From positions 13,826,001 through 13,890,000 of the forward strand of contig NW_024704755.1 in the NCBI RefSeq assembly GCF_018977255.1: a DNA stretch of 64,000 nucleotides. Reading direction: 5' to 3'. The stretch comes from Callorhinchus milii. Its lineage: Eukaryota. Position 1 is the first letter of the stretch; every line of letters starts with the position of its first letter. The notes under the pieces were generated by a model. The model searched no databases. It was not told where the DNA came from and was given only the letters and a program-made list of their open reading frames with translations. The position numbers and the translations under genes are program-made. Shown piece by piece: positions 8,222 to 63,909 of this stretch.

Positions 8222-8637
8222 CAGTGCACTCTGTATAATTGTATGGAGTCCGGACCAGACAGAAAGCGTGCAATTATATGGAGTATACAATAACCCAAAG
8301 TTCATACAATAACCCATTTCATACTCTCATACCTTCAGACTTATCTTTTTTCTTAGAATCGTTCTCCGTTTTTTTTAACTTGCCATTTGATCTGTCTTTC
8401 TCTCCATCATCTTTTCCCTTGCCATCTGTATAAATTAAAACTAATTATACACTAAGAATGAAATCAACTTGCTTGGCTGTCTTTCATGCAGTTAAGCATA
8501 TTAGGCAATTATCTGATATGTGTTTGAGCACAGTGCAATACCATGCAAACAGATAGCGAATTTATGGTACCTAGAAATTACTGTGCAATTAAATGGCGTA
8601 TGCAATTATCCGATATGCAGTTAAGTGGAGTGCCGTG
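8222..8637. mobile_element. Possible Tigger/pogo-type MITE
   Basis: Imperfect terminal inverted repeats CAGTGCACTCTGTATAATTG / CACGGCACTCCACTTAACTG (reverse complement), TA on the right flank only, internal GCAATTATC(C/T)GATATG repeats. Confidence 0.4.
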
Positions 8638-9807
8638 TACGTAATGCTATGATGTTAGTGTAACAATGTATTATCTGTGGGTGTAATGAAGATGGTGGAA
8701 TTATTATTGTACCAGGTTTATCCTTTCTCTTTGCTGCTGCTAACAACATTCTTTCTGTAGACATGAATTTTTGGAAAAGTGTGCATCTTAGAAACCACAA
8801 AAATAGTTACACTTGCGAAAATACAAAACAAGCGATTTTTAAATGAAGGAATACATCTTACCAGTTACTTGGGCACAAAGGAGAATGAGGTTGAGCACAA
8901 TAATATATTTGTACAAAGCAATGAAGCAAGATCGCTTTGGGTTTCCCATCCTGCAGGCACTGTGTATAACAAAATACAAAAGTTCAGAAACTCTTGAACA
9001 TTCTTCATCTATGCCTTTCCCTTGTCCCCTACTTTCCCATCTTCAGGTAGTGCCTGAAGACCTTCCTCTTTGACCGTGCCTATGGCCATCTCCCCCTCTC
9101 CCCAGCTCTGTGTCGTGCTCTACCACCGTGAAGCACTCTGAGACACTACACTGCGTGAGGGGTGCTACATAAATGCAAGTTGTTATTAAACACCTTCTGT
9201 TTGAATAGAAAAAGGGAAAGCATTGGAATAACAGTGGTGTTGCACAATTGCAAGTAAACTATGGAAAACTTTCAGTGAAGTAAATTTCTGTGCACATTGG
9301 AATGTACATTTGATTGAAAAGTATTAACACAATTCAAAGGATTCTTCAAAAGTGCAGGAATAGACATCAAATTTTATTGGGACGAACATCCAGAGCTTCA
9401 AGATTCTGAGTTTCCAGTTCATTGCAAAACAGTGAGAGTTATATACAGGAAATCCTTGTGAAGTAGTTCCAAGCAAATGCAGAGCAGAAGGTTTAATTAA
9501 ATTTAATATCAGAGAAACGAATGTATACCAAATATCACACCAATGTAAAAGTAAAATGTTTTTTTGCGCGGTGAATTTCCCCTCTTGCCCTGCAAATTAT
9601 TTTCTCTTGTAAAGTTCTTGTTTAATATCTACTCAATATTACAATATTACACCGAAGCAGGTTAATATAGTTCAAAAAAAAATCTTTCATCTGTCTTTGT
9701 AGTTGTTATTTATCACAAATATACAGTACTTGATTTCATATAATCAGCACAAGAAGATTCAGTACTAAGTTAGACAACTGTATCTAATGAACAGATAATA
9801 ATCCGAA

Positions 9808-10160
9808 TAATAATAATTCTTGCATTTGATATAGCATCTTATCACATTGTCGAGACATCTCAAAGTGCTTCACAGAATATACTGTAAAGTGAATTAACTG
9901 TATATTTTATGGGCGAAACGCAACAGCCAATTTGCGCACAGCAGTGTCCCACAAACAGTCGCGGATTGAGTGATCACATTTCTTTTTGAGGGATTATTAC
10001 CCCCAGAAAAACAATCCCCAACTGACTAACAACCAGGTTCCTACTTACTGCTAGGTAAACGGAGATGCGTGGAAATTTTCCTAAGGTTTCGCCTGGCTCG
10101 GGAATCGAACCTGGGTTTTCTCACCTGCATGTGCTCTAACCAATATACTACAGAACTCCA
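9808..10160 (-). mobile_element. tRNA-derived SINE (long variant)
   Basis: Same family, with an extra ~70-nt internal segment (agcagtaagtaggaacc..). Confidence 0.85.
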
Positions 10161-23571: not shown

Positions 23572-26500
23572 CCCCAGTCGGGGAGCGGCGGCAGGACAGC
23601 GCGGGGAGGAGCCTGGGCCTACTGACCAGGTACTTAAACTCGACGCCGGAGCGAGTTCAGCCCCGGGGGGGGGGGGGGGGGGGGGGGAGAGCGGGGGAAC
23701 TGCGACGTCATAGATTAGTTTTCAGGTACGTGCGCACGCACACAAAAAAAAAAAAACTCTGCGCCCCCCCCCCCCCCCCAGGGCTCACATCAGAGCCCAC
23801 TATGGTCCTGTTGGGTTTGCTGCCCCAATCTACGGGATAATGCCATCCACCTGACCGCTCGCTCCCGGTCCCCGCGTGCGCACTATGGCTGCCGCTTTGA
23901 CCCCCCTCCCTCCCTCCTCCCTCCTCTCTACCCCCAAACCCTCCCCCCTCTGCATCTCTCCCGCTCTCTCCTCCTCTCTCTCCGTCCCTCTCGTCTTCTA
24001 TCCCCACTTGACCCTCCCACAACCTCCCTCTGCTCCAGCCTGGGAATCCTCCGCCGGGCTCACCGTGGCACTCGGCGTTGGCTGTCCAGCAGCAGCCACA
24101 CCGACTGCCCCATTCCCCACCATACTCGCCAGCCACCCCGGACACAGACCCGGGGAGTCAACCTCTCCTCCCTCATCCCCATTCCCCCACCCCTGCCTCA
24201 CAACCTGGACCCCCTCCCCTCCCACACACCCTTCTGTCAACCGCTCCCTCCACATCGGACTGCAAAATGTCCGCTCCCTCTGCAACAAGGCCCTGGTCAT
24301 CAACGATCTCATCCTTGATGAGAACGTTGATATCATGGCCTTAACAGAAACCTGGCTCACCCCAGGCGACACCTTCCCCCTCACGGAGGCCACACCACCC
24401 GGCTACACCTCCCACCACATCCCCCGCCCCAACCGCCGTGGCGGTGGTGTTGCCCTTATCTCAAGGACACCACTTGCCCTATCCCCCTACTCCACTGGCT
24501 CTTTCCCCTCCTTTGAGCACCTCACCCTCTCCCACCCCTCATTCCTCTCCCTTAAAATCCTCCTCCTCTACCGGCCCCCTAAAACCTCTCCCACCTTCAT
24601 CTCTGACATTTCAACACTCCTCACATCTCTTTGCCTCTGCTCCGATCGCCTCATCATCCTGGGCGACTTTAACCTACACTTCACCCCCTCCTGCTCCATC
24701 TCCACAGACTTCTCTTCCCTGCTCTCCTCACTCAACCTCTCCTTACACATAAACTCCCCCACTCACAGTCACGGCCACCCACTCGATTTGGTGATCACCC
24801 GGGGCCTCAGTGTCTCGGATGTCACTATTACCGACAAGGCCATCTCTGACCACCACTTCATCTCCTTCACCACCTCCACCCCCCTCCCCACCTCCACCAG
24901 ACCCACCACCATCTTCTACCGCCCTTGGAAGAAGTTACCCCCACAATCCCTAACCGATGCCTTGGAGTCCTCTGAACTCCTCTCCCTCTGGCCTTCAACC
25001 CTCACCGACCCCTCTTCTCCTCTCTCCCTCCTCCACAATACCCTCTCCTCCACACTCGATACTCTTGCCCCCATCACTTCCCGCACTGTCTCCTACTCCC
25101 GCTCCTCCCCCTGGTACACCACCCACCTCCGCTCACTGAAAAGCCAGGTGCGGGCTGCTGAACGCACCTGTGTCAAATCTGGCCTAACGGTCCACCGACA
25201 AATCTGGCTGGACCTCCTCAAAATTTACCGCTCCACTCTAGCCTCGGCCAAGTCGTCCTTCTACTCCAGGATAATCCTGGAGGCGAAGAACAACCCCAGG
25301 CTACTGTTTTCCACCACAACCCGACTCCTCCGTCCCCCCCGCCACCCCGCGCAGGTCATCTCCTCCAACCTTCACTGCGAGGAGATGCTGGATTTCCTTG
25401 AATCCAAGATCAAGGGAATCCGCTCCGCGGTCACTTCCCCTCCAACTTCCACCCACCACCCACCCCTTCCCTCCCACACTCCGACTCCTACCCATCCTCC
25501 CCTACACACCTTCGTACCCGTTTCCCCACCCTCTGTCACTGAACTCATCCTATCCCTAAAACCAACCACCTGCTCCCTTGACCCCATCCCCACTCCACTC
25601 CTTATCTCCCAGCTCCACTTTCTTGCCCCACATATCACTGACATCATCAACCTGTCCCTCTCCTCTGGCTCTGTCCCCATTCCATTAAAAACTGCCATCA
25701 TCACGCCCACCCTGAAAAAACCCTCCCTTGATGCGTCGCAGCTATCAAGCTACCGGCCCATCTCCAACCTCCCCTTTCTCTCCAAGGTCTTGGAAAGAGT
25801 TGTCGCCTCCCAACTGCGCTCTTTCCTTTCCACCCATTCTCTTTTCGAACCCCTTCAGTCAGGTTTCCGTGCTGCCCATAGCACAGAAACTGCCCTGGTC
25901 AAGGTCACCAATGATATCCTGACCATCTGTGACCAGGGCTCCCTCTGTCTCCTCGTCCTCCTCGACCTATCGGCAGCATTCGATACGGTCGACCACGCTA
26001 TCCTACTCCACCGCTTGTCCTCCCACCTCAACCTTCAAGGCACTGTCCTTGAATGGTTTAGGTCGTACCTTTCTCACCGTCTTCACTTTGTCTCGACGAA
26101 TGGCTTCTCCTCCACCCCCCGTACTGTCTCATGTGGTGTCCCTCAGGGCTCTGTCCTCGGTCCCCTCCTCTTCACCCTCTATATGCTCCCCCTCGGTGAC
26201 ATCATCCGCAGACATGGAGTTAACTTCCACATGTATGCGGATGACACCCAACTCTACCTTTCCTCCTCTACTCTCAACTCCACGACCACCGATGTCCTGA
26301 CAGCTGCCTGTCCGACATCGAGTCCTGGACGAGAGACAACTTTCTTCAGCTCAACGTGCGAAAAACCGAGGCCCTCCTGATTGGCTCACGTCAGCGCCTC
26401 CGCACCTCAGGCGCTGACACCATCAGCATCCAAGGCTGCACTCTCCACCTCTCAAAGCCAGTCAGGAACCTCGGCGTTTTGTTCGACCCTGAGCTGTCCT

Positions 26501-27270
26501 TTCTCCCTCACATCCGCACCACAACTGGCACCGCCTTCCATCACCTCCGGAACATCGCCAGACTACGGCACTACCTCACCCCTCACGCTGCTGAAACCCT
26601 GGTTCACGCCTTTGTCACCTCAAGGCTGGACTATGGGAACTCTCTCCTCGCCGGCCTTCCCGCCACCTCCCTCCACAAGCTGCAGGTCATTCAGAACTCT
26701 GCAGCTCGTGTACTGTCCCGCACCAGACTTCGGGACCACATCACTCCCACCCTCGCTCGCCTCCACTGGCTCCCCATCCCCCAGAGGATTGATTTCAAGA
26801 TCCTCATCCTCACCTACAAGGCCATTCACGGCCTTGCTCCCTCCTACCTCTCCAACCTACTATCCCCCTACCTACCTGCCCGTACCCTCCGTTCCTCTGG
26901 CTCCGGTCTGCTCCACGTCCCCCGCCCCAACCGCCCTACCATCGGTGGTCGGGCCTTCAGCCTCTCAGCCCCGAGGCTCTGGAACTCCATCCCCCAGTGC
27001 CTTCGCCGCTTCCTCCCTTTCCTCCTTCAAGGCCGGTCTCAAAACCTTTCTCTTTGACCGTGCCTTCAGCTCCCCTCTCGACTCTCTTCCCCCTCCTCGC
27101 TCCCTCCCCTCACCCTGACCATTTGCCCCCTCCTCGCTCCCTCCCTTCCCTCCCCTCACCCTGACCATTTCCCCCCTGCTCGGGTCATGACCCAACTGTG
27201 CAGCGCCTTGGGACGTCCTCCCGACGTGAAAGGCGCTTTATAAATGGAATCTTGTTGTTGTTGTTGTTGT
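23572..27270 (+). mobile_element. Near-intact L2-clade LINE (APE endonuclease and reverse transcriptase), 3.7 kb
   Basis: ORF 23876-26380 carries the APE motifs (QNVRSL, ETWL, GDFN, GHPLDL, SDH) and RT motifs ([17 protein letters not shown]). It continues after a 1-nt frameshift near 26303 into ORF 26356-27057. The 3' end has a stem-loop and a (TTG)n tail. Confidence 0.95.
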
Positions 27271-27800: not shown

Positions 27801-29646
27801 TTGTTTCTTTGCTCCTCTGAGGTTTATTCTAAGGTAGGAACACTTCTTTATTCCTCCTGTCCAAGAAATGTTCAATAAAAGTTTAATAAGTGAATGTCAA
27901 ATACATGATCAACCTTCACAACGACAATAGTCTGCCTAATCCACCCATCATGAAGAATTGGGACTTTTACCCAAGCTCCAAAACCAACTTAAATGGGTAC
28001 AATTTAAGCAAATCTACATTTCCACTCAATTAATATCAGTCACAAAGACGCTTCCTGTGTCAGAATAGAATGTATTTGGGGAAACTGGGTGAAGCAATGA
28101 GCTAGAAAACATATCTTTAGCTCCAGAACCCGGTTGGAGGTGTGGTTTGCGTGCACATTTGAAGCCTCTGGATAGTAATGTTTCATAACTTCTGCACCGA
28201 TCAATGCAGTTCCCTTTACTTATCAGTACTGGAATTCACAATGTCACTGCGTGACATTACTTAACAACTGGGTGAAGAGGAACCTCATGGATCCGGAACT
28301 AAGATGCAATTGACTACGTTGTTAATGCCAGACTTATTAAATGTCCCTTTACACAAAATCATCTAAAAGCCAATCATCCAGTTCAGTATTATTGGGAGAA
28401 ATATACAGTGTTCTGTTGAAGAAAATCCCAGCTATGCAGATGGACTTTAAAACACTATTGACACTATTTGAAAAGAAAAGGAAGTTTTTTGACTAACATC
28501 TTCATTGGTCTAACTAGGTATTCGCCTGTAGTTGTTTAAAGAACAAACCTTGCTGGCCAAATGCAGTTCCCCTTTCTATTTTTTTGTTTGGTTAGTTTGG
28601 TTGTGTCTAACACCTGCAGAAATGCATCACTATGCTAAAGAGTAGCCAACCAGTTTCATGCATCCCACCTGTATATTGGAAATTCCCAAGATATTTGTTG
28701 GAATGAAATGCACATTCTCTCCATGGAGTAATGCATCCAACTTACCTGATTGTGGAAAGTATAAAGCACAGGCTGGCAAGAGCCAAATGGCCCCTAAGTC
28801 ATGGCATTTGAAAGTAATCATAGCATTTGTAAAACACTTTGAGAAGTGTCACAGAAGTAGTTTAAAGACAAAGTTTTTTAAAAAAACACTGCGTAATACC
28901 TGTTAAAACTGGTTTAATATTTTCATAGTAATAGAATATTACAGAACAGAAGGAGGCCGTTTGTCCCATTGTGCCTGTGTCGGATACCCCATCAGTCCCA
29001 CTCCCACGCTCTTACCCCATATCCTTAAAATGTTATGGCAACTGGTGCTGAGCATACCCTGAAATTAAAGTTTCTGCACAATAGCACTACTGAGTGTTCA
29101 ATCAGACATTCAGAGATTACAACTCTATTGCACAACAACATGAAGGTTGCTTAACCTCTCACTGGCACTTCACTCTTTCCCACATCACTCAGCAAGCCCC
29201 AAGTGAAACGGTTAATAAGCGATTACCTCGCAACGCTTTAGCCACTGAATCATTTCCACTCTTTCACATTAATTCATACACTGGTAATATCATTTAAATG
29301 ACAGGGACTTACAGGAGGAAGAAGCTTGGAATGATCACAAACAATTTTTTTAAAAAAAAAGTTCATACTCCACAATGCCAGTTAATTTGGCTGATTAATG
29401 AGAAAAATAATCACAAAATGTGAGGCTGAGTCACAGATCTTATGTCAATGAGACATGAAGAGAGGCCACAGAAGCTAAACCCTCTTCACAATGTGAAAAA
29501 AATCTTTTTAAGGAGGGAGAGAGAAACAATTCAAAAATGTTTTAATTGTGGAGGGAATCAGTAAGAAAAAACGGCCGGGGAGAGACTCTATTTAAAAGAA
29601 TGGTGCGTGTGTATAATAAAGAGCTCGAGCCTGTCATACAATTTGC

Positions 29647-29652
29647 TTTATT
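29647..29652 (-). terminator. Candidate polyadenylation signal of RBR copy 1
   Basis: AATAAA on the minus strand ~620 nt after the stop; the equivalent site is near 36727 in copy 2. Confidence 0.4.
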
Positions 29653-30271
29653 GAGAAAAAGAAAATAACCAAAGCATTACAGTCTATCAAAGTGTTCCTT
29701 TTGCACAATACGAGTTGCGTGCATTTCTCTCACGATTGAGGAAGGTTAGCAAGCCAGACAAAGCTGATCTTACACTCTGAGATGTACAGCAAGAGCAGTT
29801 CTAGACAGGCAATATCTGTCTTCATAAACAAAGTGGCCACACACCTGCACGATTGCAAGGCCACCATGTTAGTGTACAGTTCATTCCCTGAACAAGGGAT
29901 ATCCACTTACAGGCTATACACATCCTATGAGGTTCACGAGAGAAGTTTGGATGAAGAAGGTCCTTCGCTCATTTACAGGCTTGGCTGGGAATCTCACAGA
30001 GGTCTCTATTATCTACAGCTATGAGGCTGTTGAGATGCTCTACAAGGTTGGGAATATCAGTTCTGTTGCAAAATTTAAGAAACATGCAAAAAACATTTCT
30101 CAGGAGTGATTAGCTGACACTTGGTGTTGGGTCTGTTCAAGACCTACCACCACCTGCAAGTCCCCATTTATGGGACTTGGTTTCACTGGAATAGACAAAC
30201 TCCTACAGTAAAAGCTGAGACAACCTCCACCGGCTGTCAAGCAACCAGCTCCCAAGTCGTCAGCAAACCAT

Positions 30272-33200
30272 TCAGATTTCTCCAGGTTGATGACTTGGCT
30301 GCTGAGGTCTATCAGCTCTGGTAACTCTGTGCATTTGTAACTGAGCCCATCTGTTTTCCATTTCTAACTGAGTTTGCAGTACGAGAAGATAATCTTCATC
30401 GTCTAACTGCTCTCTTTTCTCGTAAACTTTATTGCCCGATACCTTTTGGCGTTCAGCTATAGAACAGCCCTGTAAACCTCCTGTGTGATTTTCATCCAGG
30501 CCAAGGCACCGAAAACAGAATGTATAATTGCAGTTGGGGCAGTCAATATTGCTGCAGCCTTCTAGGCAGTGTTGTGTTAACGCTTCACAGTTAGGGCAGG
30601 CTCGCACTTTTGGGCACCCGTGCACAACAGTATTCTGTACGTTGATCGTGGGACAGCCTTGGAGCAGGGCTGTAAACGTGCAGGCACCATTACCGCATGA
30701 GTTGCTCTGCACATCAGGATTCCTCCATTCCCTCAGGCAGTCAAAGCAAAACACAAAGACTTTCTTTTTTGTCTCAGAGCACGGCAGACACTCCGCAGAC
30801 AGCTTCTCCAGGTCCACTCTCTGTACATACAGACCACATTCTGGACACTGAGGACAAAGCATACCATTAGTCACACTATTGTCCCCTTCGGTTGAGCGCA
30901 ATATTGATTCCTCAACAATTCCCTGCAGCTTTGGAGAATTCAGGCTCCCTAGCTACCTTGAAGGCAATCATTTTGTGCACAACAAGTTCCCACAAGTGAC
31001 CATGAGGAAAGCTATTCAACAAGTTATCCAGTAAATAGCTGGGCTTTCCAGACCAAGAAGCTACCATGTTCATTCCTCGCCCTGTGCTGCAATCCAATCT
31101 CAATCAAGACGGCATTGAAGAGAACTACAGTCTGTCTCAGAATCCTGGATTCAAATAAGGGAGATTGGCTGCTAGGTTTTGCCCACAAAATACAGTCAAT
31201 TCACTTTGCAGTGTATCATGTGAAGCACTTTGAGGCATCTCAACAACATGATAAGGCACTATGTGCAAGGATTATTATTATGATGGTCAATCGAAATTCA
31301 CTCTGCTGATTCCTTTTGGGACAGCATTTGTAGATAATAATAATCCTTGCATTTCATATAGTGCCTGATCACATCTTCGAGATGTCTCAAAGCACTTCAC
31401 AGAATATACTGTAAAGTGAATTAACTGTATATTTTTGGGGCAAAAAGCAGCAGCCAATTGGACACAGCAATGTCCACAAACAGTCATGGACTGACTGATC
31501 AAATTATTATTATAATTATTTTTGGAATGAATTATTACCCCCGGAAAAGCGATCCAACAATCGTCTAACAACCGGGTTCCTACTTATTGCTTGGTAAACA
31601 GAGGTGTGTGGAGTAAGGAAACTTGCCCAATGTTTCACCCTGCCAGAAATCAAACCAGGTCTCTCGCTTGCGAGGCGAGTGTTCTAATCACTGAGCTACA
31701 TGAATCCTAGGACTAGAGATAGCATGAAGACATGGATTACACTCGGCTGCAATTCTGTGATTATTCAAACAGAAGGCAGTTTCTCCCAATGATTTGGACA
31801 ATCTTCCAGATAACAGTGCTCATTTGTTGCACCTTGATGTGTGTGCACAATCTTGTGTTTTGTCTACAAATAGATTTGTCTGCAATAATCTGTGAAACTT
31901 CAAAACATTCACAAGGGCTGTGTATCAAATGCAAGGATTAACTTGAGTGAGGGACAAGAAGTAAAACGGATTATCAGCCGAACAGATCAACATCTGTCAC
32001 TTCATTTTCACTGGCTATTTGATGAGGATGTGAATACAAGATAATTGATTATATTCAAGCAGCATGAGGTGGACAGACCTGTGGCAGGTAAGTAGAGAGA
32101 CAGAGAGATGCACACACAAACCGAGGCAATCAGAGAGACAGAGAGCAAGAGAGATACACACATAGAATCCACCATAGTCCAGTCCGAATGTAAAAATATG
32201 GTAATATCAAAAGCAAATATCAGGAAACAGCCTGTTTGACTAGAGTCAGTTAGAAGGCTCAAAGAGCTGCCGACCTCAGATAACAAGCTGGTGCATTCTC
32301 AGATAACCCTGCTAGGAACAACCCATCATTGTGAGAAGCAAGTAGTCTCAAGGTCTGGGAAAGAAAGGTGCGTAGAGATTAGGGAGACCGGGGGAAGATG
32401 GCCACGGGAACAGGAAAGAATGCTAGAATGCAAGGGATACCATCTCCAATGGGTACAGGCCAATTAAAGGCAGCTACAGGAGAGAGATAAGGGAAGACAA
32501 GGGTTGGGGCATTTACAATGGGCCACATTGTTTTTGGTTAATTAAATCAAAGAAACGAGCTAAGATAAAACAACACTATACAGGAATGATGAGCTAAAGC
32601 CATTCCTGATAAGAGTGTGATCACATTAAAGGGCACAAATCAAGAGTTAGGAAGTACAGGACACTGACCAGGAAAGATCTGGTTATTGGCCAGACACTGC
32701 TAGAGAGGTATAAGTATAGGAGTGAAATAGTCAAGAGAGAACGAGACTCAGCGGAGGTAGACAGGGGAACAGCCCTGCAGTCACTCGAACGAGACGACAC
32801 TCTGTAGCAGGTTGAGCTGCAGAGACGTTGGGAGGAACCATCCCGCTTGTGTCTTGAGCCGATCCGCTGATCAGTTCAAGAGACAGTATCTTACGATACT
32901 GGAGCAGGAGAAATGGGACAGAGGGCAGAGGAACGCGATTGAGAACCAGAGAAAAGAGGAGAAAGTGGACAGAGGGCAGAGGAACTCAATTGAGATCCAT
33001 AAAAANGGGAACGGCATAGATCACCCGGCAATTTGAATTTGGCAATTCCAATGTAACGGAATTGTTACAGGAATCCAAGGACTAGAGATAGCATGAAGAC
33101 ATGGATTACACTCGGCTGCAATTCTGTGATTATTCAAACAGAAGGCAGTTTCTCCCAATGATTTGGACAATCTTGCATCCTGAACTTTACCTTTTTGAAA

Positions 33201-35134
33201 GATTCATCCGCTTGTGTTGTTATCCTGCTGATTATCTCCTCACAGGAGCTCCGCTCTTCCTGCGTTAGGCAGGCCAGTGCACATACCTCCTGCCAGAGCC
33301 AAACTTTACAGCACTTTGGGCATTTAAACACCAAGTGACCCTGCAGAGAATTATCAAGTGTTAAAACCACAGTAAAGACTACACGACCACAGGCTACATT
33401 CTTCCATTTAATATCCAGATGAGTAATTGGCTGCAATGTAACACAGCGTTAAGATAGTTTCTGCCATATATCTATTAATTTCAGCTTCAGAGAATGAAGT
33501 TGTGCCAGAGATGGCGTTCAATTCTGTTCCCTCTCCTTTGTGGTCCAGTGAGAGAACGGAAAGGAACACTGTTCAAAGATAGGCAGATCCCAGCGTCAGT
33601 ACCTCAAGTCAAAATGCAAACTTAGTGATCAATAGCTTTATTGAACCATCGGTGAGTTGTTTTCTCCTCTTACCGTGTGAACTGCTCGGTCACCACTTGT
33701 CAACTGATGAGTGGAGTCTCACATCTCATGACTCTTTGGTACACGTTTTTGAGAGGTTATTGGGAGAGACCCTCCTCACAATTAAGACCAGATATGAGAT
33801 TTAATTAATCAGCGAGTAAAACCCACAAAGCTTAAATAATTCTGGTGCACCCTGACCTCACCTCATTCAGAACCGCCTCACACCATTTGTTCAGGCCCTT
33901 GGACTCCACCAAATGGCCACATGATGCTGTACACAAACGACCCCTGCAAAACAGAACAGAAGCAACCACGAGTCATGAGGCGCAACTCAAAGTACTGTCA
34001 ATCTCAAAACTGCACTCTCCACAAATCAGTTGGAAGCTACTTAACTGAAGAGTTCATGGAGAAAGGCAAATCCCTCAGGATTATCAGAAGATCGTTATAT
34101 CAGGGCATTCACTATAGTAAGGTTTGGCTGTCAAACTGGTGCAAAGGTCAGGCATTGCCTTTGGGATTGTTAAAAACAGGGGTTTGTTTATAAGCAACAA
34201 CAACAACAACAAGATTCCATTTATAAAGCGCCTTTCACGTCAGGAGGACGTCCCAAGGCGCTGCACAGTTGGGTCATGACCCGAGCAGGGGGGAAATGGT
34301 CAGGGTGAGGGGAGGGAAGGGAGGGAGCGAGGAGGGGCGAAATGGTCAGGGTGAGGGGAGGGAAGGGAGGGAGCGAGGAGGGGGAAGAGAGTCGAGAGGG
34401 GAGCTGAAGGCACGGTCAAAGAGAAAGCAGAGTTCATTACAGTCAGGTTCAACCGTACGTGACTTTCTACACCCCCTACTCACCTCTCTTTACTTCAGCT
34501 CACTGAGACCAATTGTAGTACTCAAGTATCTCAGTTCTAACTCAAGCCCATACCAGGAATTGAGTTTGGCACAGTTTAAACAATAGCTTTTATGTGCAGA
34601 GCCATAAATGGAGAGGCTGCTGTCGCCATTCTCTTTCAGTTCCATTTTGATTCAGTTCCTCAGAACAAACTTTCAGATTGAAACAAGATTTAAAATGAAG
34701 ACAAAGGCTGAGTTTTTACATTGCACCCTGATGCCATCCTGATACATACGCAGCTTGATGCCACCTAATCACCAATAGATGGATTGGTAATTAGGTGGCA
34801 TCCATCTCACTTTCCTACTAACACTCAATTATAATGATTCCGAGACTGATGAGCCTCGACTCATCACCCGCTTCTCCTTAGAAAAAGACTTCTGAGGCCT
34901 TTTGCCTGGATTCCTTCCTCTGCTTCTTTGACAGTAATTGGTTCAACCACTGTTGATTTAAACATGTTCAGAATGATACTCTACCAACATCACAAGAGCC
35001 ATTATTAAATAAAGGCCTTACAGTACCTATGAATAGCAATACATTCTGAAAAATAGCTTTTTACCTGTTCCCTTATAAGCTTTGGTAAGAAACTGAAACC
35101 TTCTACTGGTCGCCTCGTAAGCAATGATTTCCAT
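30272..35134 (-). CDS. RBR-type (RING1-IBR-RING2-like) E3 ubiquitin ligase, copy 1; 4 exons, ~286 aa, frame intact
   Basis: Exons 35065-35134 ([23 protein letters not shown]), 33862-33926 ([22 protein letters not shown]), 33191-33340 ([22 protein letters not shown]) and 30272-30847 ([66 protein letters not shown]..) join in frame with GT-AG boundaries (861 nt). The Cys pattern matches the fish expanded RBR-like family as recalled. The first exon is the least certain. Confidence 0.8.
31335..31708 (-). mobile_element. tRNA-derived SINE in an RBR copy 1 intron (duplicated at ~38410-38781)
   Basis: Full head-core-tail structure, antisense to the plus strand. Confidence 0.85.
34195..34425 (-). 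mobile_element. L2 3' fragment in RBR intron 1 (duplicated at ~41267-41502)
   Basis: (CAA)n tail and L2 stem-loop, antisense. Confidence 0.88.
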
Positions 35135-35232
35135 CTTGTTATCACACTGCCGAGGAGTCGAAATGCAGACCGTCTTTAACAAAGAGTATCCATAGATCTG
35201 ACTTTCAGCGCCTACTCTCCCTGAACTAGTTC

Positions 35233-35251
35233 TTTCTCTTTCACTTTCACT
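35233..35251 (-). promoter_or_regulatory. ISRE/IRF-E element (three GAAA cores) upstream of RBR copy 1
   Basis: Minus strand AGTGAAAGTGAAAGAGAAA contains GAAANNGAAA twice, overlapping, about 100 nt upstream of the ATG at 35134. Confidence 0.6.
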
Positions 35252-37359
35252 CTTGTGGTTTCCTGGTATTTACAACAACAACCAACAAAATTACATTGAT
35301 ATAGCGCCTTTCACGGTGGGAGGACGTCCCAAGGCGCTGGACAATCAGTGGTTCAGACCGGAGCAGTGGACGGAAGTCTGCAGGGGAGTAGTGTGGTTTT
35401 GAAATTTTTATAAAACCTTATCTCAATTATGCAACAGAACTTGAGTGCTATATGAAACTGTTGCCTTGGAAAAGGCAATAGTTTCAAACCACCTCTGCTC
35501 ATTATTTTGTCAATGCGCCAACATTGGTGGAAATTATGCGCCATTTCCTGATTTGCCCCACCATTTGGCTTAGACATTCTTATAATACCTGAATCAAGGA
35601 ATGAATGACTTACAAACAGCAGAGCTTCAGTGGCTGATTCCTGAGAGTTATCAGACTCTCCGCAATTCATCTGAACCATTTAATAATTACTTCCCAATTT
35701 AACCTTCTGAAAATCATGATGCAGTACCCACCCTCTTTGTTATAGTTTCAAATAACTTTAATAACCTTTTCCTAAATAAGTTGGCAGCTCTCAAACCTGA
35801 TCCGGGAGGAGAAAAAGGATAGAAATTTCTAATGAAAAGAAAGCACCCTCTCGTGGATGTTCTGCACAAATAGCACAAAATCTAGCATCGGCGTTATGAT
35901 GAAAAAACAATGCGAATCACTTCTGGGAAATGTTTCAACCAAAGCTGCAGCACACCAATAAAGCCTTTGGTTTTTTTAAACTAGAAACGCAGGAGGTTGC
36001 CAATTGTTTTATCTCTAAATAGCTTGACTTTTCATATTGTAGCTTCAGGCTTGTGAACAATGAGTAGTTTGTTGAATATCATTTGAAATAAAGAGGTCTC
36101 CAGTTAATCCTTAACTGCACCCACCCACAGACTTGAAAGTTCAAATAGCATCCATAAACCCCTTGGAGCTCTTCTATGATTTACGCCGTTCCCCCGAAAC
36201 ATGCAGTCAAATTTCAGGTCACTGTGAAACTGTACAAAGAAATGACCTCATCAACAATCAGCACTGGCAAAAAACGTCAGAGAGTGGGCAAGTAGCCAAC
36301 ATTACCTGTTAGTGTCCTTTGCGAACAAACACGTTGAACTCCAATCAGCAGCTCACCATTCCACACTTATTACGTGTGCGGTGGGGAGTACAATCTCTTT
36401 GCGTAGCTCGAGAGCAATCAGGAACATAAGAGGCTTCCACCTACAATGCCAGTTAATTTGGCTGATTAATGAGAAAAATAATCACAAAATGTGAGGCTGA
36501 GTCACAGATCTTATGTCAATGAGACATGAAGAGAGGCCACAGAAGCTAAACCCTCTTCACAATGTGAAAAAAATCTTTTTAAGGAGGGAGAGAGAAACAA
36601 TTCAAAAATGTTTTAATTGTGGAGGGAATCAGTAAGAAAAAACGGACGGGGAGAGAGTCTATTTGAAAGATTAAAAGAATGGTGCGTGTGTATAATAAAG
36701 AGCTCGAGCCTGTCATACAATTTGCTTTATTGAGAAAAAGAAAATAACCAAAGCATTACAGTCTATCAAAGTGTTCCTTTTGCACAATACGAGTTGCGTG
36801 CATTTCTCTCACGATTGAGGAAGGTTAGCAAGCCAGACAAAGCTGATCTTACACTCTGAGATGTACAGCAAGAGCAGTTCTAGACAGGCAATATCTGTTT
36901 TCACAAACAAAGTGGCCACACACCTGCACGATTGCAAGGCCACCATGTTAGTGTACAGTTCATTCCCTGAACAAGGGATATCACTTACAGGCTATACACA
37001 TCCTATGAGGTTCACGAGAGAAGTTTGGATGAAGAAGGTCCTTCGCTCATTTACAGGCTTGGCTGGGAATCTCACAGAGGTCTCTATTATCTACAGCTAT
37101 GAGGCTGTTGAGATGCTCTACAAGGTTGGGAATATCAGTTCTGTTGCAAAATTTAAGAAACATGCAAAAAACATTTCTCAGGAGTGATTAGCTGACACTT
37201 GGTGTTGGGTCTGTTCAAGACCTACCACCACCTGCCAAGTCCCCATTTATGGGACTTGGTTTCACTGGAATAGACAAACTCCTACAGTAAAAGCTGAGAC
37301 AACCTCCACCGGCTGTCAAGCAACCAGCTCCCAAGTCGTCAGCAAACCATTCAGATTTC

Positions 37360-40300
37360 TCAAGGTTGATTACTTGGCTGCTGAGGTCCATCAGCTCTGG
37401 TAACTCTGTGCATTTGTAACTGAGCCCATCTGTTTTCCATTTCTAACTGAGCTTGCAGTAAGAGATATGCTCGAATGTTTTTCTCTCTTTTCTTGTAAAC
37501 TTTATTGCCCAATACCTTTTGGCGTTCAGCTATAGAACAGCCCTGTAAACCTCTTGTGTGATTTCCATTCAAGCCAAGGCACCGAAAACAGAATGTATAA
37601 TTGCAGTTGGGGCAGTCAATATTGCTGCAGCCTTCTAGGCAGTGTTGTGTTAACGCCTCACAGTTAGGGCAGGCTCGCACTTTTGGGCACCCGTGCACAA
37701 CAGTATTCTGTACGTTGATCGTGGGACAGCCTTGGAGCAGGGCTGTAAACGTGCAGGCACCATTACCGCATGAGTTGCTCTGCACATCAGGATTCCTCCA
37801 TTCCCTCAGGCAGTCAAAGCAAAACACAAAGACTTTCTTTTTTGTCTCAGAGCACGGCAGACACTCCGCAGACAGCTTCTCCAGGTCCACTCTCTGTACA
37901 TACAGACCACATTCTGGACACTGAGGACAAAGCATACCATTAGTCACACTATTGTCCCCTTCGGTTGAGCGCAATATTGATTCCTCAACAATTCCCTGCA
38001 GCTTTGGAGAATTCAGGCTCCCTAGCTACCTTGAAGGCAATCATTTTGTGCACAACAAGTTCCCACAAGTGACCATGAGGAAAGCTATTCAACAAGTTAT
38101 CCAGTAAATAGCTGGGCTTTCCAGACCAAGAAGCTACCATGTTCATTCCTCGCCCTGTGCTGCAATCCAATCTCAATCAAGACGGCATTGAAGAGAACTA
38201 CAGTCTGTCTCAGAATCCTGGATTCAAATAAGGGAGATTGGCTGCTAGGTTTTGCCCACAAAATACAGTCAATTCACTTTGCAGTGTATCATGTGAAGCA
38301 CTTTGAGGCATCTCAACAACATGATAAGGCACTATGTGCAAGGATTATTATTATGATGGTCAATCGAAATTCACTCTGCTGATTCCTTTTGGGACAGCAT
38401 TTGTAGATAATAATAATCCTTGCATTTCATATAGTGCCTGATCACATCTTCGAGATGTCTCAAAGCACTTCACAGAATATACTGTAAAGTGAATTAACTG
38501 TATATTTTTGGGGCAAAAAGCAGCAGCCAATTGGACACAGCAATGTCCACAAACAGTCATGGACTGACTGATCAAATTATTATTATAATTATTTTTGGAA
38601 TAAATTATTACTCCCGGAAAAGCGATCCAACAATCGTCTAACAACCGGGTTCCTACTTATTGCTTGGTAAACAGAGGCGTGTGGAGTAAGGAAACTTGCC
38701 CAACGTTTCACCCTGCCAGAAATCAAACCAGGTCTCTCGCTTGCGAGGTGAGTGTTCTAATCACTGAGCTACAGGAATCCAAGGACTAGAGATAGCATGA
38801 AGACATGGATTACACTCGGCTGCAATTCTGTGATTATTCAAACAGAAGGCAGTTTCTCCCAATGATTTGGACAATCTTCCAGATAACAGTGCTCATTTGT
38901 TGCACCTTGATGTGTGTGCACAATCTTGTGTTTTGTCTACAAATAGATTTGTCTGCAATAATCTGTGAAACTTCAAAACATTCACAAGGGCTGCGTATCA
39001 ATTGCAAGGATTAACTTGAGTGAGGTACAAGAAGTAAAACGGATTATCAGCCGAACAGATCAACATCTGTCACTTCATTTTCACTGGCTATTTGATGAGG
39101 ATGTGAATACAAGATAATTGATTATATTCAAGCAGCATGAGGTGGACAGACCTGTGGCAGGTAAGTAGAGAGACAGAGAGATGCACACACAAACCGAGGC
39201 AATCAGAGAGACAGAGAGCAAGAGAGATACACACATAGAATCCACCATAGTCCAGTCCGAATGTAAAAATATGGTAATATCAAAAGCAAATATCAGGAAA
39301 CAGCCTGTTTGACTAGAGTCAGTTAGAAGGCTCAAAGAGCTGCCGACCTCAGATAACAAGCTGGTGCATTCTCAGATAACCCTGCTAGGAACAACCCATC
39401 ATTGTGAGAAGCAAGTAGTCTCAAGGTCTGGGAAAGAAAGGTGCGTAGAGATTAGGGAGACCGGGGGAAGATGGCCACGGGAACAGGAAAGAATGCTAGA
39501 ATGCAAGGGATACCATCTCCAATGGGTACAGGCCAATTAAAGGCAGCTACAGGAGAGAGATAAGGGAAGACAAGGGTTGGGGCATTTACAATGGGCCACA
39601 TTGTTTTTGGTTAATTAAATCAAAGAAACGAGCTAAGATAAAACAACACTATACAGGAATGATGAGCTAAAGCCATTCCTGATAAGAGTGTGATCACATT
39701 AAAGGGCACAAATCAAGAGTTAGGAAGTACAGGACACTGACCAGGAAAGATCTGGTTATTGGCCAGACACTGCTAGAGAGGTATAAGTATAGGAGTGAAA
39801 TAGTCAAGAGAGAACGAGACTCAGCGGAGGTAGACAGGGGAACAGCCCTGCAGTCACTCGAACGAGACGACACTCTGTAGCAGGTTGAGCTGCAGAGACG
39901 TTGGGAGGAACCATCCCGCTTGTGTCTTGAGCCGATCCGCTGATCAGTTCAAGAGACAGTATCTTACGATACTGGAGCAGGAGAAATGGGACAGAGGGCA
40001 GAGGAACGCGATTGAGAACCAGAGAAAAGAGGAGAAAGTGGACAGAGGGCAGAGGAACTCAATTGAGATCCATAAAAAAGGGAACGGCATAGATCACCCG
40101 GCAATTTGAATTTGGCAATTCCAATGTAACGGAATTGTTACAGGAATCCAAGGACTAGAGATAGCATGAAGACATGGATTACACTCGGCTGCAATTCTGT
40201 GATTATTCAAACAGAAGGCAGTTTCTCCCAATGATTTGGACAATCTTGCATCCTGAACTTTACCTTTTTGAAAGATTCATCCGCTTGTGTTGTTATCCTG

Positions 40301-42207
40301 CTGATTATCTCCTCACAGGAGCTCCGCTCTTCCTGCGTTAGGCAGGCCAGTGCACATACCTCCTGCCAGAGCCAAACTTTACAGCACTTTGGGCATTTAA
40401 ACACCAAGTGACCTGCAGAGAATTATCAAGTGTTAAAACCACAGTAAAGACTACACGACCACAGGCTACATTCTTCCATTTAATATCCAGATGAGTAATT
40501 GGCTGCAATGTAACACAGCGTTAAGATAGTTTCTGCCATATATCTATTAATTTCAGCTTCAGAGAATGAAGTTGTGCCAGAGATGGCGTTCAATTCTGTT
40601 TCCTCTCCTTTGTGGTCCAGTGAGAGAACGGAAAGGAACACTGTTCAAAGATAGGCAGATCCCAGCGTCAGTACCTCAAGTCAAAATGCAAACCTAGTGA
40701 TCAATAGCTTTATTGAACCATCGGTGAGTTGTTTTCTCCTCTTACCGTGTGAACTGCTCGGTCACCACTTGTCAACTGATGAGTGGAGTCTCACATCTCA
40801 TGACTCTTTGGTACACGTTTTTGAGAGGTTATTGGGAGAGACCCTCCTCACAATTAAGACCAGATATGAGATTTAATTAATCAGCGAGTAAAACCCACAA
40901 AGCTTAAATAATTCTGGTGCACCCTGACCTCACCTCATTCAGAACCGCCTCACACCATTTGTTCAGGCCCTTGGACTCCACCAAATGGCCACATGATGCT
41001 GTACACAAACGACCCCCTGCAAAACAGAACAGAAGCAACCACGAGTCATGAGGCGCAACTCAAAGTACTGTCAATCTCAAAACTGCACTCTCCACAAATC
41101 AGTTGGAAGCTACTTAACTGAAGAGTTCATGGAGAAAGGCAAATCCCTCAGGATTATCAGAAGATCGTTATATCAGGGCATTCACTATAGTAAGGTTTGG
41201 CTGTCAAACTGGTGCAAAGGTCAGGCATTGCCTTTGGGATTGTTAAAAACAGGGGTTTGTTTATAAGCAACAACAACAACAACAACAAGATTCCATTTAT
41301 AAAGCGCCTTTCACGTCAGGAGGACGTCCCAAGGCGCTGCACAGTTGGGTCATGACCCGAGCAGGGGGGAAATGGTCAGGGTGAGGGGAGGGAAGGGAGG
41401 GAGCGAGGAGGGGGGAAATGGTCAGGGTGAGGGGAGGGAAGGGAGGGAGCGAGGAGGGGAAGAGAGTCGAGAGGGGAGCTGAAGGCACGGTCAAAGAGAA
41501 AGCAGAGTTCATTACAGTCAGGTTCAACCGTACGTGACTTTCTACACCCCCTACTCACCTCTCTTTACTTCAGCTCACTGAGACCAATTGTAGTACTCAA
41601 GTATCTCAGTTCTAACTCAAGCCCATACCAGGAATTGAGTTTGGCACAGTTTAAACAATAGCTTTTATGTGCAGAGCCATAAATGGAGAGGCTGCTGTCG
41701 CCATTCTCTTTCAGTTCCATTTTGATTCAGTTCCTCAGAACAAACTTTCAGATTGAAACAAGATTTAAAATGAAGACAAAGGCTGTTTTTACATTGCACC
41801 CTGATGCCATCCTGATACATACGCAGCTTGATGCCACCTAATCACCAATAGATGGATTGGTAATTAGGTGGCATCCATCTCACTTTCCTACTAACACTCA
41901 ATCATAATGATTCCGAGACTGATGAGCCTCGACTCATCACCCGCTTCTCCTTAGAAAAAGACTTCTGAGGCCTTTTGCCTGGATTCCTTCCTCTGCTTCT
42001 TTGACAGTAATTGGTTCAACCACTGTTGATTTAAACATGTTCAGAATGATACTCTACCAACATCACAAGAGCCATTATTAAATAAAGGCCTTACAGTACC
42101 TATGAATAGCAATACATTCTGAAAAATAGCTTTTTACCTGTTCCCTTATAAGCTTTGGTAAGAAACTGAAACCTTCTACTGGTCGCCTCGTAAGCAATGA
42201 TTTCCAT
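37360..42207 (-). pseudogene. RBR-type E3 ligase, copy 2; 1-nt frameshift at the start of exon 3 (probable pseudogene or assembly error)
   Basis: Exons 42138-42207, 40934-40998, 40264-40412 (149 nt versus 150 in copy 1: cag|GTCAC versus cag|GGTCAC) and 37360-37920 (earlier TGA, altered tail). Confidence 0.7.
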
Positions 42208-42305
42208 CTTGTTATCACACTGCCGAGGAGTCGAAATGCAGACTGTCTTTAACAAAGAGTATCCATAGATCTGACTTTCAGCGCCTACTCTCCCTGAACT
42301 AGTTC

Positions 42306-42324
42306 TTTCTCTTTCACTTTCACT
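42306..42324 (-). promoter_or_regulatory. ISRE/IRF-E element upstream of RBR copy 2
   Basis: Same AGTGAAAGTGAAAGAGAAA motif as in copy 1. Confidence 0.6.
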
Positions 42325-42952
42325 CTTGTGGTTTCCTGGTATTTACAACAACAACCAACAAAATTACATTGATATAGCGCCTTTCACGGTGGGAGGACGT
42401 CCCAAGGCGCTGGACAATCAGTGGTTCAGACCGGAGCAGTGGACGGAAGTCTGCAGGGGAGTAGTGTGGTTTTGAAATTTTTATAAAACCTTATCTCAAT
42501 TATGCAACAGAACTTGAGTGCTATATGAAACTTGCCTTGGAAAAGGCAATAATTTCAAACCACCTCTGCTCATTATTTTGTCAATGCGCCAACATTGGTG
42601 GAAATTATGCGCCATTTCCTGATTTGCCCCACCATTTGGCTTAGACATTCTTATAATACCTGAATCAAGGAATGAATGACTTACAAACAGCAGAGCTTCA
42701 GTGGCTGAATCCTGAGAGTTATCAGACTCTCCGCAATTCATCTGAACCATTTAATAATTACTTCCCAATTTAACCTTCTGAAAATCATGATGCAGTACCC
42801 ACCCTCTTTGTTATAGTTTCAAATAACTTTAATAACCTTTTCCTAAATAAGTTGGCAGCTCTCAAACCTGATCCGGGAGGAGAAAAAGGATAGAAATTTC
42901 TAATGAAAAGAAAGCACCCTCTCGTGGATGTTCTGCACAAATAGCACAAAAT

Positions 42953-43220
42953 TCCAGGCAGAGGGTGAAACCTTGGGCAAGTTTCCTTACTCCACACGCC
43001 TAATAATAATCCCTCCAAAACTAAAAACAATAATTAAATTGGTCATTTTCAATCTACGACTGTTTGTGGGACATTGCTGTGCGCAATTGGCTGCCGCGTT
43101 CGCCCACAAATATACAGTCAATTCACTTTACAGTGTGTTCTGTGAAGCGCTTTGGGACGTCCTCCCGACGTGAAAAGCGCTATATCAAATGCAAGGATTA
43201 TTATTATTATTATTATTATT
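42953..43220 (+). mobile_element. 5'-truncated young SINE present only in duplication unit 2; AAAAT target duplication
   Basis: Unit 1 has the empty site gcacAAAATctagc at ~35876-35885; unit 2 has AAAAT-SINE-(TTA)n-AAAAT. Confidence 0.92.
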
Positions 43221-43814
43221 AAAATCTAGCATCGGCGTTATGATGAAAAAACAATGCGAATCACTTCTGGGAAATGTTTCAACCAAAGCTGCAGCACACC
43301 AATAAAGCCTTTGGTTTTTTTAAACTAGAAACGCAGGAGGTTGCCAATTGTTTCATCTCTTAATAGCTTGACTTTTCATATTGTAGCTTCAGGCTTGTGA
43401 ACAATGAGTAGTTTGTTGAATATCATTTGAAATAAAGAGGTCTCCAGTTAATCCGTTAACTGCACCCACCCACAAACCTGAAAGTTCAAATAGCATCCAT
43501 AAACCCCTTGGAGCTCTTCTATGATTTACGCCATTCCCCCGAAACATACGATCAAATTTCAGGTCACTGTGAAACTGTACAAAGAAATGACCTCATCAAC
43601 AATCAGCACTGGCAAAAAACGTCAGAGAGTGGGCAAGTAGCCAACATTACCTGTTAGTGCCCTTTGCGAACAAACACAATGAACTCCAATCAGCAGCTCA
43701 CCATTCCACACTTATTACGTGTGCGGTGGGGAGTACAATTTCTTTGCGTAGCTCGAGAGCAATCAGGAACATAAGAGGCTTCCACCCATACAATGCATTT
43801 GCAGAGCCTGTAAA

Positions 43815-44419: not shown

Positions 44420-63909
<19,490 letters not shown>

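What the first reader, a model, noticed from the sequence alone, without database searches (positions are those of the whole stretch)
29372..43796. Tandemly duplicated, ISRE-driven RBR-like ubiquitin ligase cassette: candidate interferon-inducible antiviral E3 pair
Seen in sequence: each 7-kb unit holds an entire 4-exon gene, from a triple-GAAA element (AGTGAAAGTGAAAGAGAAA) ~100 nt before the ATG to an AATAAA downstream of the stop. The protein has a degenerate RING1 (SCGH..WC..FKCPKC), an IBR-like module (CPEC..CLPC..FCFDC), and a RING2-like module whose catalytic-position Cys is kept (LEGCSNIDC, versus GGCMHMKC in parkin), with Asn at the His position. Established: GAAANNGAAA repeats close to the start site are the hallmark of IRF/ISGF3 targets, and RBR ligases act through a RING2 thioester cysteine. 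Inference: an interferon-stimulated, copy-number-variable E3 family with no obvious mammalian orthologue, inserted beside MBTPS1.
Basis: partly seen in the sequence, partly recalled or inferred. Interest (0 to 1): 0.7.

Follow-up and report, generated by a model that had tools for sequence, protein, structure and literature searches.

The report
Duplicated interferon-type RBR ligase gene pair
Two near-identical tandem copies of an elephant-shark gene for a small RBR-type ubiquitin ligase, an unnamed sister of the interferon-induced 'ARIT' ligases of salmon, each carry an interferon-type promoter element conserved from chimaeras to turtles, but in this assembly neither copy reads through in the standard four-exon form.

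Summary
The tandem duplication is real: unit 1 is 29372-36442 and unit 2 is 36443-43796, about 99% identical. The gene lies on the minus strand of Callorhinchus milii DNA. Each unit holds four coding exons, a triple-GAAA element 98 nt before the ATG, and poly(A) signals. The protein has a half RING1 (one zinc site), a full IBR and a full RING2/Rcat. The catalytic cysteine is near-invariant, and the usual histidine two residues later is missing in all relatives. Fold searches return only RBR ligases.

The family is not orphan. Its sister clade was named ARIT in 2025 and is strongly induced by interferon-gamma and ISAV in salmon. The window's gene belongs to a separate, older paralogue clade (chimaera, sharks, coelacanth, lungfish, sturgeons, turtles; bootstrap 200/200).

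A sense-strand GAAANNGAAA lies within 200 nt of the ATG in 7 of 10 relatives examined, so IRF/interferon control is well supported by footprinting. It is not shown by expression in this species.

One caveat applies. As assembled, each copy has one single-base length difference at a different exon edge, and this breaks the standard reading frame. cDNA-derived proteins of both copy types are intact.

This is a solid but modestly novel finding.

The parts
29372..36442 (-). Duplication unit 1 (gene copy 1 with promoter and 3' end)
   Evidence: the junction shows a 7-nt microhomology, ACAATGC
36443..43796 (-). Duplication unit 2 (gene copy 2). It carries about 273 nt extra near 42953-43220, belonging to an interspersed-repeat family.
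35233..35251 (-). Copy 1 triple-GAAA IRF/ISRE-type element, 98 nt before the ATG
   Evidence: conserved block in relatives
35065..35134 (-). Copy 1 standard coding exon 1 (70 nt; N-terminus conserved in sharks)
34554..34645 (-). Copy 1 alternative first coding exon used by the RefSeq model XP_042196106.1. Only this model gives an intact ORF (299 aa) in this assembly.
33862..33943 (-). Copy 1 exon 2 (82 nt; 83 nt in copy 2). Encodes the Cys-x-His part of the RING1-like module.
33191..33340 (-). Copy 1 exon 3 (150 nt). Encodes the CPxC of the RING1-like module and a helical linker.
30272..30847 (-). Copy 1 exon 4 coding part with stop. Encodes the IBR, the Rcat/RING2 and a variable tail.
30272..30500 (-). 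Divergence island between the copies (tail after the Rcat). It holds 20 of 55 substitutions in 3% of the unit.
   Evidence: Fisher p = 8e-17
29541..29652 (-). Copy 1 poly(A) signals (two hexamers, 620 and 726 nt after the stop)
42306..42324 (-). Copy 2 triple-GAAA element
42138..42207 (-). Copy 2 coding exon 1 (70 nt)
40934..41016 (-). Copy 2 exon 2 (83 nt)
40264..40412 (-). Copy 2 exon 3 (149 nt; 150 nt in copy 1)
37360..37920 (-). Copy 2 exon 4 coding part with stop (five codons shorter than copy 1)
36612..36731 (-). Copy 2 poly(A) signals
35270..35375 (.). Fragment of an interspersed repeat (3' tail shared with the LINE at 23876-27118) that abuts the element. The element itself is not part of the repeat.
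44420..63888 (-). Neighbour: 3' part of MBTPS1 (site-1 protease); last coding exon at 44420-44611
   Evidence: E = 2.8e-29 to human S1P residues 697-750

Best explanation
The region is a recent tandem duplication, joined at a 7-nt microhomology, of a Callorhinchus milii gene (RefSeq LOC103172137 and its twin). The gene encodes a small, soluble protein of about 290 aa made only of an RBR module.

The protein belongs to an ancient jawed-vertebrate clade that is the paralogue of the recently named ARIT ligases. Its parts are:
- a half RING1 that keeps one zinc site (Cys-x-His ... CPxC);
- a complete IBR with eight Cys;
- a complete Rcat/RING2 with eight zinc ligands, plus a near-invariant active-site Cys.

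Inferred mechanism. IRF-family factors (IRF1 and/or ISGF3), activated by interferon or virus sensing, bind the promoter-proximal triple-GAAA element and switch the genes on. The protein then takes ubiquitin, or a ubiquitin-like modifier such as ISG15, from an E2 onto the Rcat cysteine as a thioester and passes it to substrates. The histidine that normally assists this step is missing. A near-invariant His five residues before the Cys may replace it.

The tail after the Rcat is the only part where the two copies differ strongly. This would fit two copies with different partners.

What is shown: the duplication, the gene structure, the domain make-up, clade membership, and conservation of the element. 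What is inferred: induction, catalysis, the modifier used, and the role of the tail.

In this assembly the standard frame of each copy is interrupted once. I think assembly or allelic length differences in short G-runs are the likelier cause, because transcripts of both types encode intact proteins.
For: - Duplication.
- Species and gene: the joined exons translate exactly to XP_042196106.1. Cluster members include the cDNA-derived NP_001279179.1/AFK10743.1 (292 aa, copy-1 tail) and V9L2X2 (287 aa, copy-2 tail), both intact.
- RBR nature: Pfam IBR is above its cut-off. Alignments to ARIH1/ARIH2 cover IBR-Rcat. The AlphaFold model from 87 sequences has pLDDT 81.9, and the top 29 Foldseek PDB hits are all RBR ligases (ARIH2 E = 3.4e-7, HHARI, HOIP, parkin, RNF216, HOIL-1).
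- Conserved ligands and active-site Cys.
- Clade: 36% identity to the Callorhinchus ARIT-type protein. The split between clade B and the ARIT clade has 200/200 bootstrap support, with both clades present in the same species.
- Induction of the sister clade: salmon ARIT.1/ARIT.2 show log2 fold change above 11 with interferon-gamma and above 4 with ISAV (PMC12234341).
- Element: a sense GAAANNGAAA lies 52-177 nt before the ATG in Stegostoma, Emydura (two genes), Gopherus, Polyodon and Micropterus as well as here. A near-identical 19-mer lies 510 nt upstream in Heptranchias. Only 2% of background 200-nt windows hold such a motif.
Against: - There are no expression data for this species or this clade, and the transcription start is unmapped.
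- The two ARIT-type genes of Callorhinchus itself have no such motif within 400 nt of their annotated ATG. In Heptranchias the best copy is 510 nt away.
- The standard ORFs are broken in both copies as assembled. The RefSeq models on this assembly avoid the standard exons: one is N-terminally truncated to 239 aa and the other uses an alternative 5' exon.
- RING1 lacks half of its zinc ligands and gives no Pfam RING hit, so canonical E2 docking is not assured.
- The histidine two residues after the active Cys is absent in all relatives.
Confidence: 0.65

Rival explanations
1. One or both copies are decaying pseudogenes. The duplication made the gene redundant, and single-base losses at exon edges have already disabled the standard protein.
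For: The standard joined exons are 878 and 863 nt, with early stops. Copy 2 has no full-length ORF under either 5' exon model. The RefSeq models on this assembly are atypical.
Against: - Transcript-derived proteins of both tail types are intact.
- The first 121 codons of exon 4 differ by one synonymous change only.
- Both differences sit in short G-runs, and 3 of 6 single-base indels between the units lie in homopolymers, a common place for assembly error.
- Copy 1 keeps an intact 299-aa ORF through the alternative exon.
Confidence: 0.25
2. The protein is not a ubiquitin ligase in the usual sense. It could be a ligase-dead zinc scaffold or regulator. Or it could be an E3 dedicated to a ubiquitin-like modifier, either ISG15 or the small LRLPGG-ended protein encoded beside the ARIT-type genes.
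For: - The half RING1 and the missing His.
- In Callorhinchus the ARIT-type genes sit next to a USP gene and a 98-aa ubiquitin-like gene.
- USP-ARIT fusions are predicted in a skate and an elephant shrew.
- The salmon authors raise ISG15 ligase activity as an open question.
Against: - The active-site Cys and all eight Rcat ligands are kept in 87 sequences over roughly 450 million years, which argues against a dead enzyme.
- No ubiquitin-like or USP gene lies in this window.
- The gene cluster concerns the sister clade, not this one.
Confidence: 0.2
3. The GAAA element drives constitutive, immune-cell-restricted expression through IRF1, IRF4 or IRF8, rather than interferon or virus induction.
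For: The element is built of repeated GAAA-G-T/A hexamers and lacks a nearby GAS site. Salmon ARIT.1 has low basal expression limited to immune tissues.
Against: The same salmon genes rise more than 1000-fold with interferon-gamma and more than 16-fold with virus. The element is kept close to the ATG across very distant species, as is typical of induced genes (my own knowledge).
Confidence: 0.12

Closest known systems
ARIT (Grimholt, Sindre & Sundaram 2025, Front Immunol, PMC12234341); zebrafish-derived database name si:ch211-212k18.15
   Same: - RBR-only soluble protein of about 250-300 aa, with no transmembrane or flanking domains.
- Same half RING1 (Cys-x-His ... CP), same IBR and Rcat ligands, same near-invariant active Cys, and no His two residues later.
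- 36% identity within Callorhinchus.
- Tandem near-identical pairs: the salmon ARIT.1/ARIT.2 pair is 98% identical.
- Absent from humans.
   Different: - It is a separate clade (bootstrap 200/200), and both clades are present in chimaera, sharks, coelacanth, lungfish and turtles.
- The loop between CP and the conserved Trp is shorter.
- One RING1-region Cys (residue 45) is kept in only 5 of 12 members.
- The C-terminal motif differs (RQK-L/V-T/S-G against RQTSIP).
- No mammalian or bird member was seen.
- Induction has been measured only for ARIT.
Ariadne ligases ARIH1/HHARI and ARIH2
   Same: Best sequence and fold matches. The IBR and Rcat align, including the active Cys.
   Different: - There is no complete RING1, no UBA-like or Ariadne auto-inhibitory domain, and no His after the active Cys.
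- The sequence match is weak (E about 0.007-0.02).
RNF144A/RNF144B, RNF19A/B and RNF217 (the names automatic annotation gives these genes)
   Same: Small RBR proteins; the Pfam IBR hits are shared.
   Different: - There is no transmembrane helix.
- Salmon RNF144 genes cluster apart from ARIT and are not induced.
- The database names are best-hit labels, not orthology.

Membership tests
RBR (RING-between-RING) E3 ligases | RING1 with eight cross-braced zinc ligands (the E2-binding module) | tested here: not met
   Only C32, H34, C58 and C61 are conserved (plus C45 in the ARIT clade), which is one zinc site. There is no Pfam RING hit at E <= 1.
RBR (RING-between-RING) E3 ligases | IBR domain | tested here: met
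   Pfam PF01485 scores 33.3 bits against a cut-off of 24.3, in two stretches. Eight invariant Cys lie at residues 102-157.
RBR (RING-between-RING) E3 ligases | Rcat/RING2 with eight zinc ligands and an active-site Cys | tested here: met
   The ligands are C185, C188, C204, C207, C212, C215, H/C222 and C229. C199 aligns with the active Cys of ARIH1/ARIH2 and is kept in at least 90% of 87 sequences.
RBR (RING-between-RING) E3 ligases | Histidine two residues after the active Cys | tested here: not met
   It is Asn here and variable (N, S, A, D, Q, M, K, Y) in relatives. A near-invariant His lies five residues before the Cys instead.
RBR (RING-between-RING) E3 ligases | Overall three-module fold | tested here: met
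   The model has pLDDT 81.9. The top 29 Foldseek PDB hits are all RBRs over about 200-240 columns. TM-scores are low (about 0.2-0.28), as expected for flexible modules.
RBR (RING-between-RING) E3 ligases | Thioester-dependent transfer of ubiquitin | not testable with these tools
   This is a biochemical property.
ARIT clade (PMC12234341) | Clusters with salmon ARIT in a phylogeny | tested here: not met
   The ARIT clade was identified by a 17-residue string of salmon ARIT.1, found in ten clade-A proteins, and by the Emys and Elephas proteins of the paper's species. The window's protein falls in the sister clade, with 200/200 bootstrap support.
ARIT clade (PMC12234341) | RBR module only, with no transmembrane or extra domains | tested here: met
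ARIT clade (PMC12234341) | Induced by interferon or virus | not testable with these tools
   Only the promoter footprint is available for this clade.
Interferon-stimulated genes with a proximal ISRE/IRF element | GAAANNGAAA-type element close to the start of the gene | tested here: met
   Two overlapping matches lie 114 and 108 nt before the ATG in both copies.
Interferon-stimulated genes with a proximal ISRE/IRF element | Element conserved in orthologues | tested here: met
   Seven of 10 genes examined have it within 200 nt, against a 2% background.
Interferon-stimulated genes with a proximal ISRE/IRF element | Transcription start near the element; measured induction | not tested
   No transcript 5' ends or expression data were reachable.

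The most novel reading that the evidence does not exclude
ARIT-type proteins, including this sister clade, may form a mechanistically distinct branch of RBR enzymes. They have a one-zinc RING1 and a relocated catalytic histidine. They would serve a dedicated interferon-era ubiquitin-like system, either ISG15 or the small LRLPGG-ended protein encoded with a USP beside the ARIT-type genes in elephant shark. That system would have been lost on the way to humans. The sharply divergent tail of the two tandem copies would then mark recognition surfaces that diversify under pressure from pathogens.
Probability: 0.15. Interest if true: 0.75.

Novelty: new member of a known kind. Interest (0 to 1): 0.45.

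Why it matters
Interferon-induced E3 ligases are central to antiviral defence, yet the human set is incomplete as a picture of the vertebrate toolkit. This locus shows that, besides the ARIT ligases noticed in salmon in 2025, a second and equally old paralogue clade exists. Its IRF-type promoter element has been kept from chimaeras to turtles, which points to an interferon-linked role dating back to early jawed vertebrates. The family also departs from the textbook RBR design (half RING1, no histidine after the active cysteine). It is therefore a natural test case for what an RBR enzyme minimally needs. The two copies, identical except for a short coding island, offer built-in markers for copy-specific expression studies.

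Tried and rejected
- Fetching the DNA of P0001, P0003, P0004 and P0006 failed because they are not on record. The lungfish gene was too long to fetch.
- Literature searches for DDB_G0292642 and si:ch211-212k18.15 as interferon-stimulated genes found nothing relevant.
- The zebrafish interferon-stimulated-gene preprint and a 2026 fish review on these genes mention no RBR, IBR or RNF144 genes.
- A trout table lists induced 'RNF144A-like' genes, but they cannot be linked to this family.
- MBTPS1 exons were not found in the 6-10 kb flanks of relatives' loci, so shared synteny is unresolved.
- A first bootstrap on a random subset of unlabelled representatives gave only 7/100 for an exact split. I replaced it with a labelled, species-matched set.
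- No GAS (TTC-N3-GAA), NF-kB or nearby TATA motif lies near the element.
- The antisense GAAA-type motif inside coding exon 1 is kept only in Heptranchias. It looks like a by-product of the RFQF codons.
- I considered an alternative weak donor 22 nt downstream of exon 1 that would restore copy 1's frame. I rejected it as unsupported, because no relative and no database protein uses it.
- The first structure model, from 8 sequences, was poor for the Rcat. It was superseded by the 87-sequence model.
Full report
**What is there**

The window is Callorhinchus milii DNA. The joined exons of copy 1 translate exactly to RefSeq XP_042196106.1.

Positions 29372-36442 and 36443-43796 are direct repeats. 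They differ by 56 substitutions and 14 indels, including a 273-nt extra stretch in unit 2 that belongs to an interspersed-repeat family. The last 7 nt of the array repeat the first 7 nt of a unit (ACAATGC). This points to a microhomology-mediated tandem duplication.

The finding's 19-mer occurs exactly twice, both times on the minus strand, and none is expected by chance. The gene is therefore on the minus strand.

**Gene structure**

tblastn with the database protein P0001 (UniRef A0A4W3GCC3) finds four coding exons per unit, and inspection of the splice sites confirms them.

| Copy | Exon 1 | Exon 2 | Exon 3 | Exon 4 |
|---|---|---|---|---|
| 1 | 35134-35065 | 33943-33862 | 33340-33191 | 30847-30272 |
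| 2 | 42207-42138 | 41016-40934 | 40412-40264 | 37920-37360 |

All borders are GT/AG. Poly(A) signals follow 620-743 nt after the stops, inside the units.

Exon 2 is 82 nt in copy 1 and 83 nt in copy 2. Exon 3 is 150 nt in copy 1 and 149 nt in copy 2. Joined as they stand, the standard models are 878 and 863 nt long, and they stop after 40 and 75 residues.

NCBI's models on this same assembly avoid the problem.
- XP_042196106.1 (299 aa) uses another first coding exon, 34645-34554, which restores the frame of copy 1.
- XP_042196346.1 (239 aa) starts late in copy 2.

Proteins derived from transcripts are intact for both tail types: NP_001279179.1/AFK10743.1 (292 aa, copy-1 type) and V9L2X2 (287 aa, copy-2 type). 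Both length differences lie in short G-runs. I cannot tell from the window whether they are assembly errors, alleles or true lesions.

**The protein**

- Pfam finds IBR above its cut-off and no RING domain.
- The sequence and the family profile match only the IBR-Rcat part of ARIH1/ARIH2, and weakly.
- In alignments of 32 and 87 relatives, the conserved Cys/His fall into three groups.
  - C32, H34, C58 and C61, plus C45 in the ARIT clade, form one zinc site of a RING1.
  - Eight Cys between residues 102 and 157 form the IBR.
  - C185, C188, C204, C207, C212, C215, H/C222 and C229 are the Rcat ligands.
- C199 sits where ARIH1/ARIH2 have their active Cys.
- The residue two positions later is Asn here and varies in relatives; it is never His in the sets examined.
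- A His five residues before the Cys is near-invariant.
- An AlphaFold model built on 87 sequences has mean pLDDT 81.9.
- Its 29 best Foldseek matches in the PDB are all RBR ligases.

**Relatives**

The first searches found sharks, coelacanth and a turtle. An exhaustive profile search found 933 representatives, 104 of them below 1e-30. Labelled examples are turtles, lungfish, paddlefish, sturgeon, teleosts, a ray, an elephant shrew and a sponge.

A 2025 paper (PMC12234341) names a previously undescribed RBR clade ARIT.
- It occurs in teleosts, reptiles, monkeys, elephant and echidna, and is absent in humans.
- The protein consists of the RBR module only.
- In salmon there are two genes 98% identical on one chromosome.
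- These genes rise by log2 above 11 with interferon-gamma and above 4 with ISAV.

A 17-residue string of salmon ARIT.1 printed in that paper's supplement occurs in ten of my clade-A proteins. The Emys and Elephas proteins of the paper's species are also in that clade.

Callorhinchus, Heptranchias, Heterodontus, Latimeria, Protopterus and turtles each have ARIT-type genes in addition to the type in this window. The two Callorhinchus types are 36% identical. In a species-matched neighbour-joining tree, the window's clade (12 sequences) separates from 20 ARIT-type sequences in 200 of 200 bootstraps. The gene is therefore an old paralogue of ARIT, not ARIT itself.

**The promoter element**

The element is GAAANNGAAA twice over, 114 and 108 nt before the ATG. 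A repeat fragment at 35270-35375 abuts it. The element is not part of that repeat, because other copies of the repeat lack it.

The table gives the distance of the sense-strand motif before the ATG in relatives.

| Species (locus) | Distance of motif before the ATG |
|---|---|
| Stegostoma | 89 nt |
| Emydura, first gene | 52 nt |
| Emydura, head-to-head paralogue | 69 nt |
| Gopherus | 59 and 53 nt |
| Polyodon | 177 nt |
| Micropterus (ARIT-type) | 71 nt |
| Heptranchias | 510 nt (differs from the Callorhinchus 19-mer at one base within its first 18), plus a degenerate copy near 100 nt |

The two ARIT-type genes in the Callorhinchus locus L007 have none within 400 nt.

Only 2.0% of 200-nt windows in all fetched DNA hold such a motif. 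Seven hits in eight genes has P of about 1e-11. With the two negatives added, seven of ten remains far beyond chance.

This is phylogenetic footprinting, not expression. From my own knowledge, repeated GAAA-G-T-type hexamers are classic IRF1/IRF-family sites. That would fit the very strong interferon-gamma response of salmon ARIT.

**Differences between the copies**

Twenty of 55 substitutions fall in 30272-30500, which codes the tail just after the Rcat (Fisher p = 8e-17). They affect 13 codons non-synonymously and 4 synonymously, and there are two 3-nt indels. The preceding 121 codons differ once, synonymously.

There are two possible readings. An older duplication may be kept uniform by gene conversion except where selection keeps the tails apart. 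Or a converted patch may have come from another copy. Database variants that mix the two tails (P0301) show that exchange does occur.

**Verdict**

Interferon or IRF control is well supported indirectly.

- The family does have mammalian relatives, in the sister clade.
- It is not undescribed.
- The standard ORFs are not intact in this assembly.

**Slip note**

All comparisons reported rest on tool alignments or on letters quoted by the finding or a paper.

Noticed in passing
L007 (Callorhinchus milii MU249842.1:14965852-14988701), 1-22850: The ARIT-type paralogues of elephant shark sit in a cluster. It holds a USP/UCH gene (1-5277, minus strand), a 98-aa two-exon ubiquitin-like gene (6504-6912), and then two ARIT-type genes (10001-12850 and 18190 onwards). 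The C-terminal half of the ubiquitin-like protein matches ubiquitin residues 39-76 and ends in LRLPGG plus a short extension. A GAAAGTGAAA lies between the USP and ubiquitin-like genes. The layout looks like a conjugation and deconjugation cassette.
   Followed up: partly
P0193 (Leucoraja erinacea, 613 aa) and P0040 (Elephantulus edwardii, 457 aa): These predicted proteins fuse a USP domain to an ARIT-type RBR. The best PDB matches of the USP part are USP47 and USP18. In a trout infection table, a 'USP47-like' and an 'RNF144A-A' gene with neighbouring locus numbers are both induced (PMC8467531).
   Followed up: partly
window 30272-30500 (copy 1) and the matching part of 37360-37575 (copy 2): This short coding island is about 9% divergent inside units that are otherwise about 0.5% divergent. 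Most changes alter the protein, and there are two in-frame 3-nt indels.
   Followed up: yes
window 35089-35098 (minus strand; codons for RFQF in exon 1): An antisense GAAA-NN-GAAA-type motif lies inside the coding exon, 37 nt after the ATG. It is shared only with Heptranchias, so it is probably a by-product of the codons.
   Followed up: yes
window 14928-15380 and 18445-18747 (+ strand): Two exons encode an immunoglobulin V-set domain and a C1-set domain (Pfam E = 9e-8 and 9e-14). They belong to an unidentified immune-type receptor gene to the left of the pair.
   Followed up: partly
window 23876-27118 (+ strand): This is a LINE-type retrotransposon copy with endonuclease and reverse-transcriptase domains. 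It is GC-rich with a strong negative GC skew. Short fragments of its 3' tail recur across the window, including in intron 1 of both gene copies and next to the promoter element.
   Followed up: partly
window 31697-31808, 33066-33177, 38770-38881, 40139-40250: A 112-nt sequence is present twice per unit, 1369 nt apart, flanking exon 3 in the introns. It was not characterised.
   Followed up: no
L003 (Emydura macquarii) 8401-11956: Two paralogues of this clade lie head to head, 344 nt apart. Each has its own GAAA-type motif, so they share a bidirectional interferon-type promoter.
   Followed up: partly
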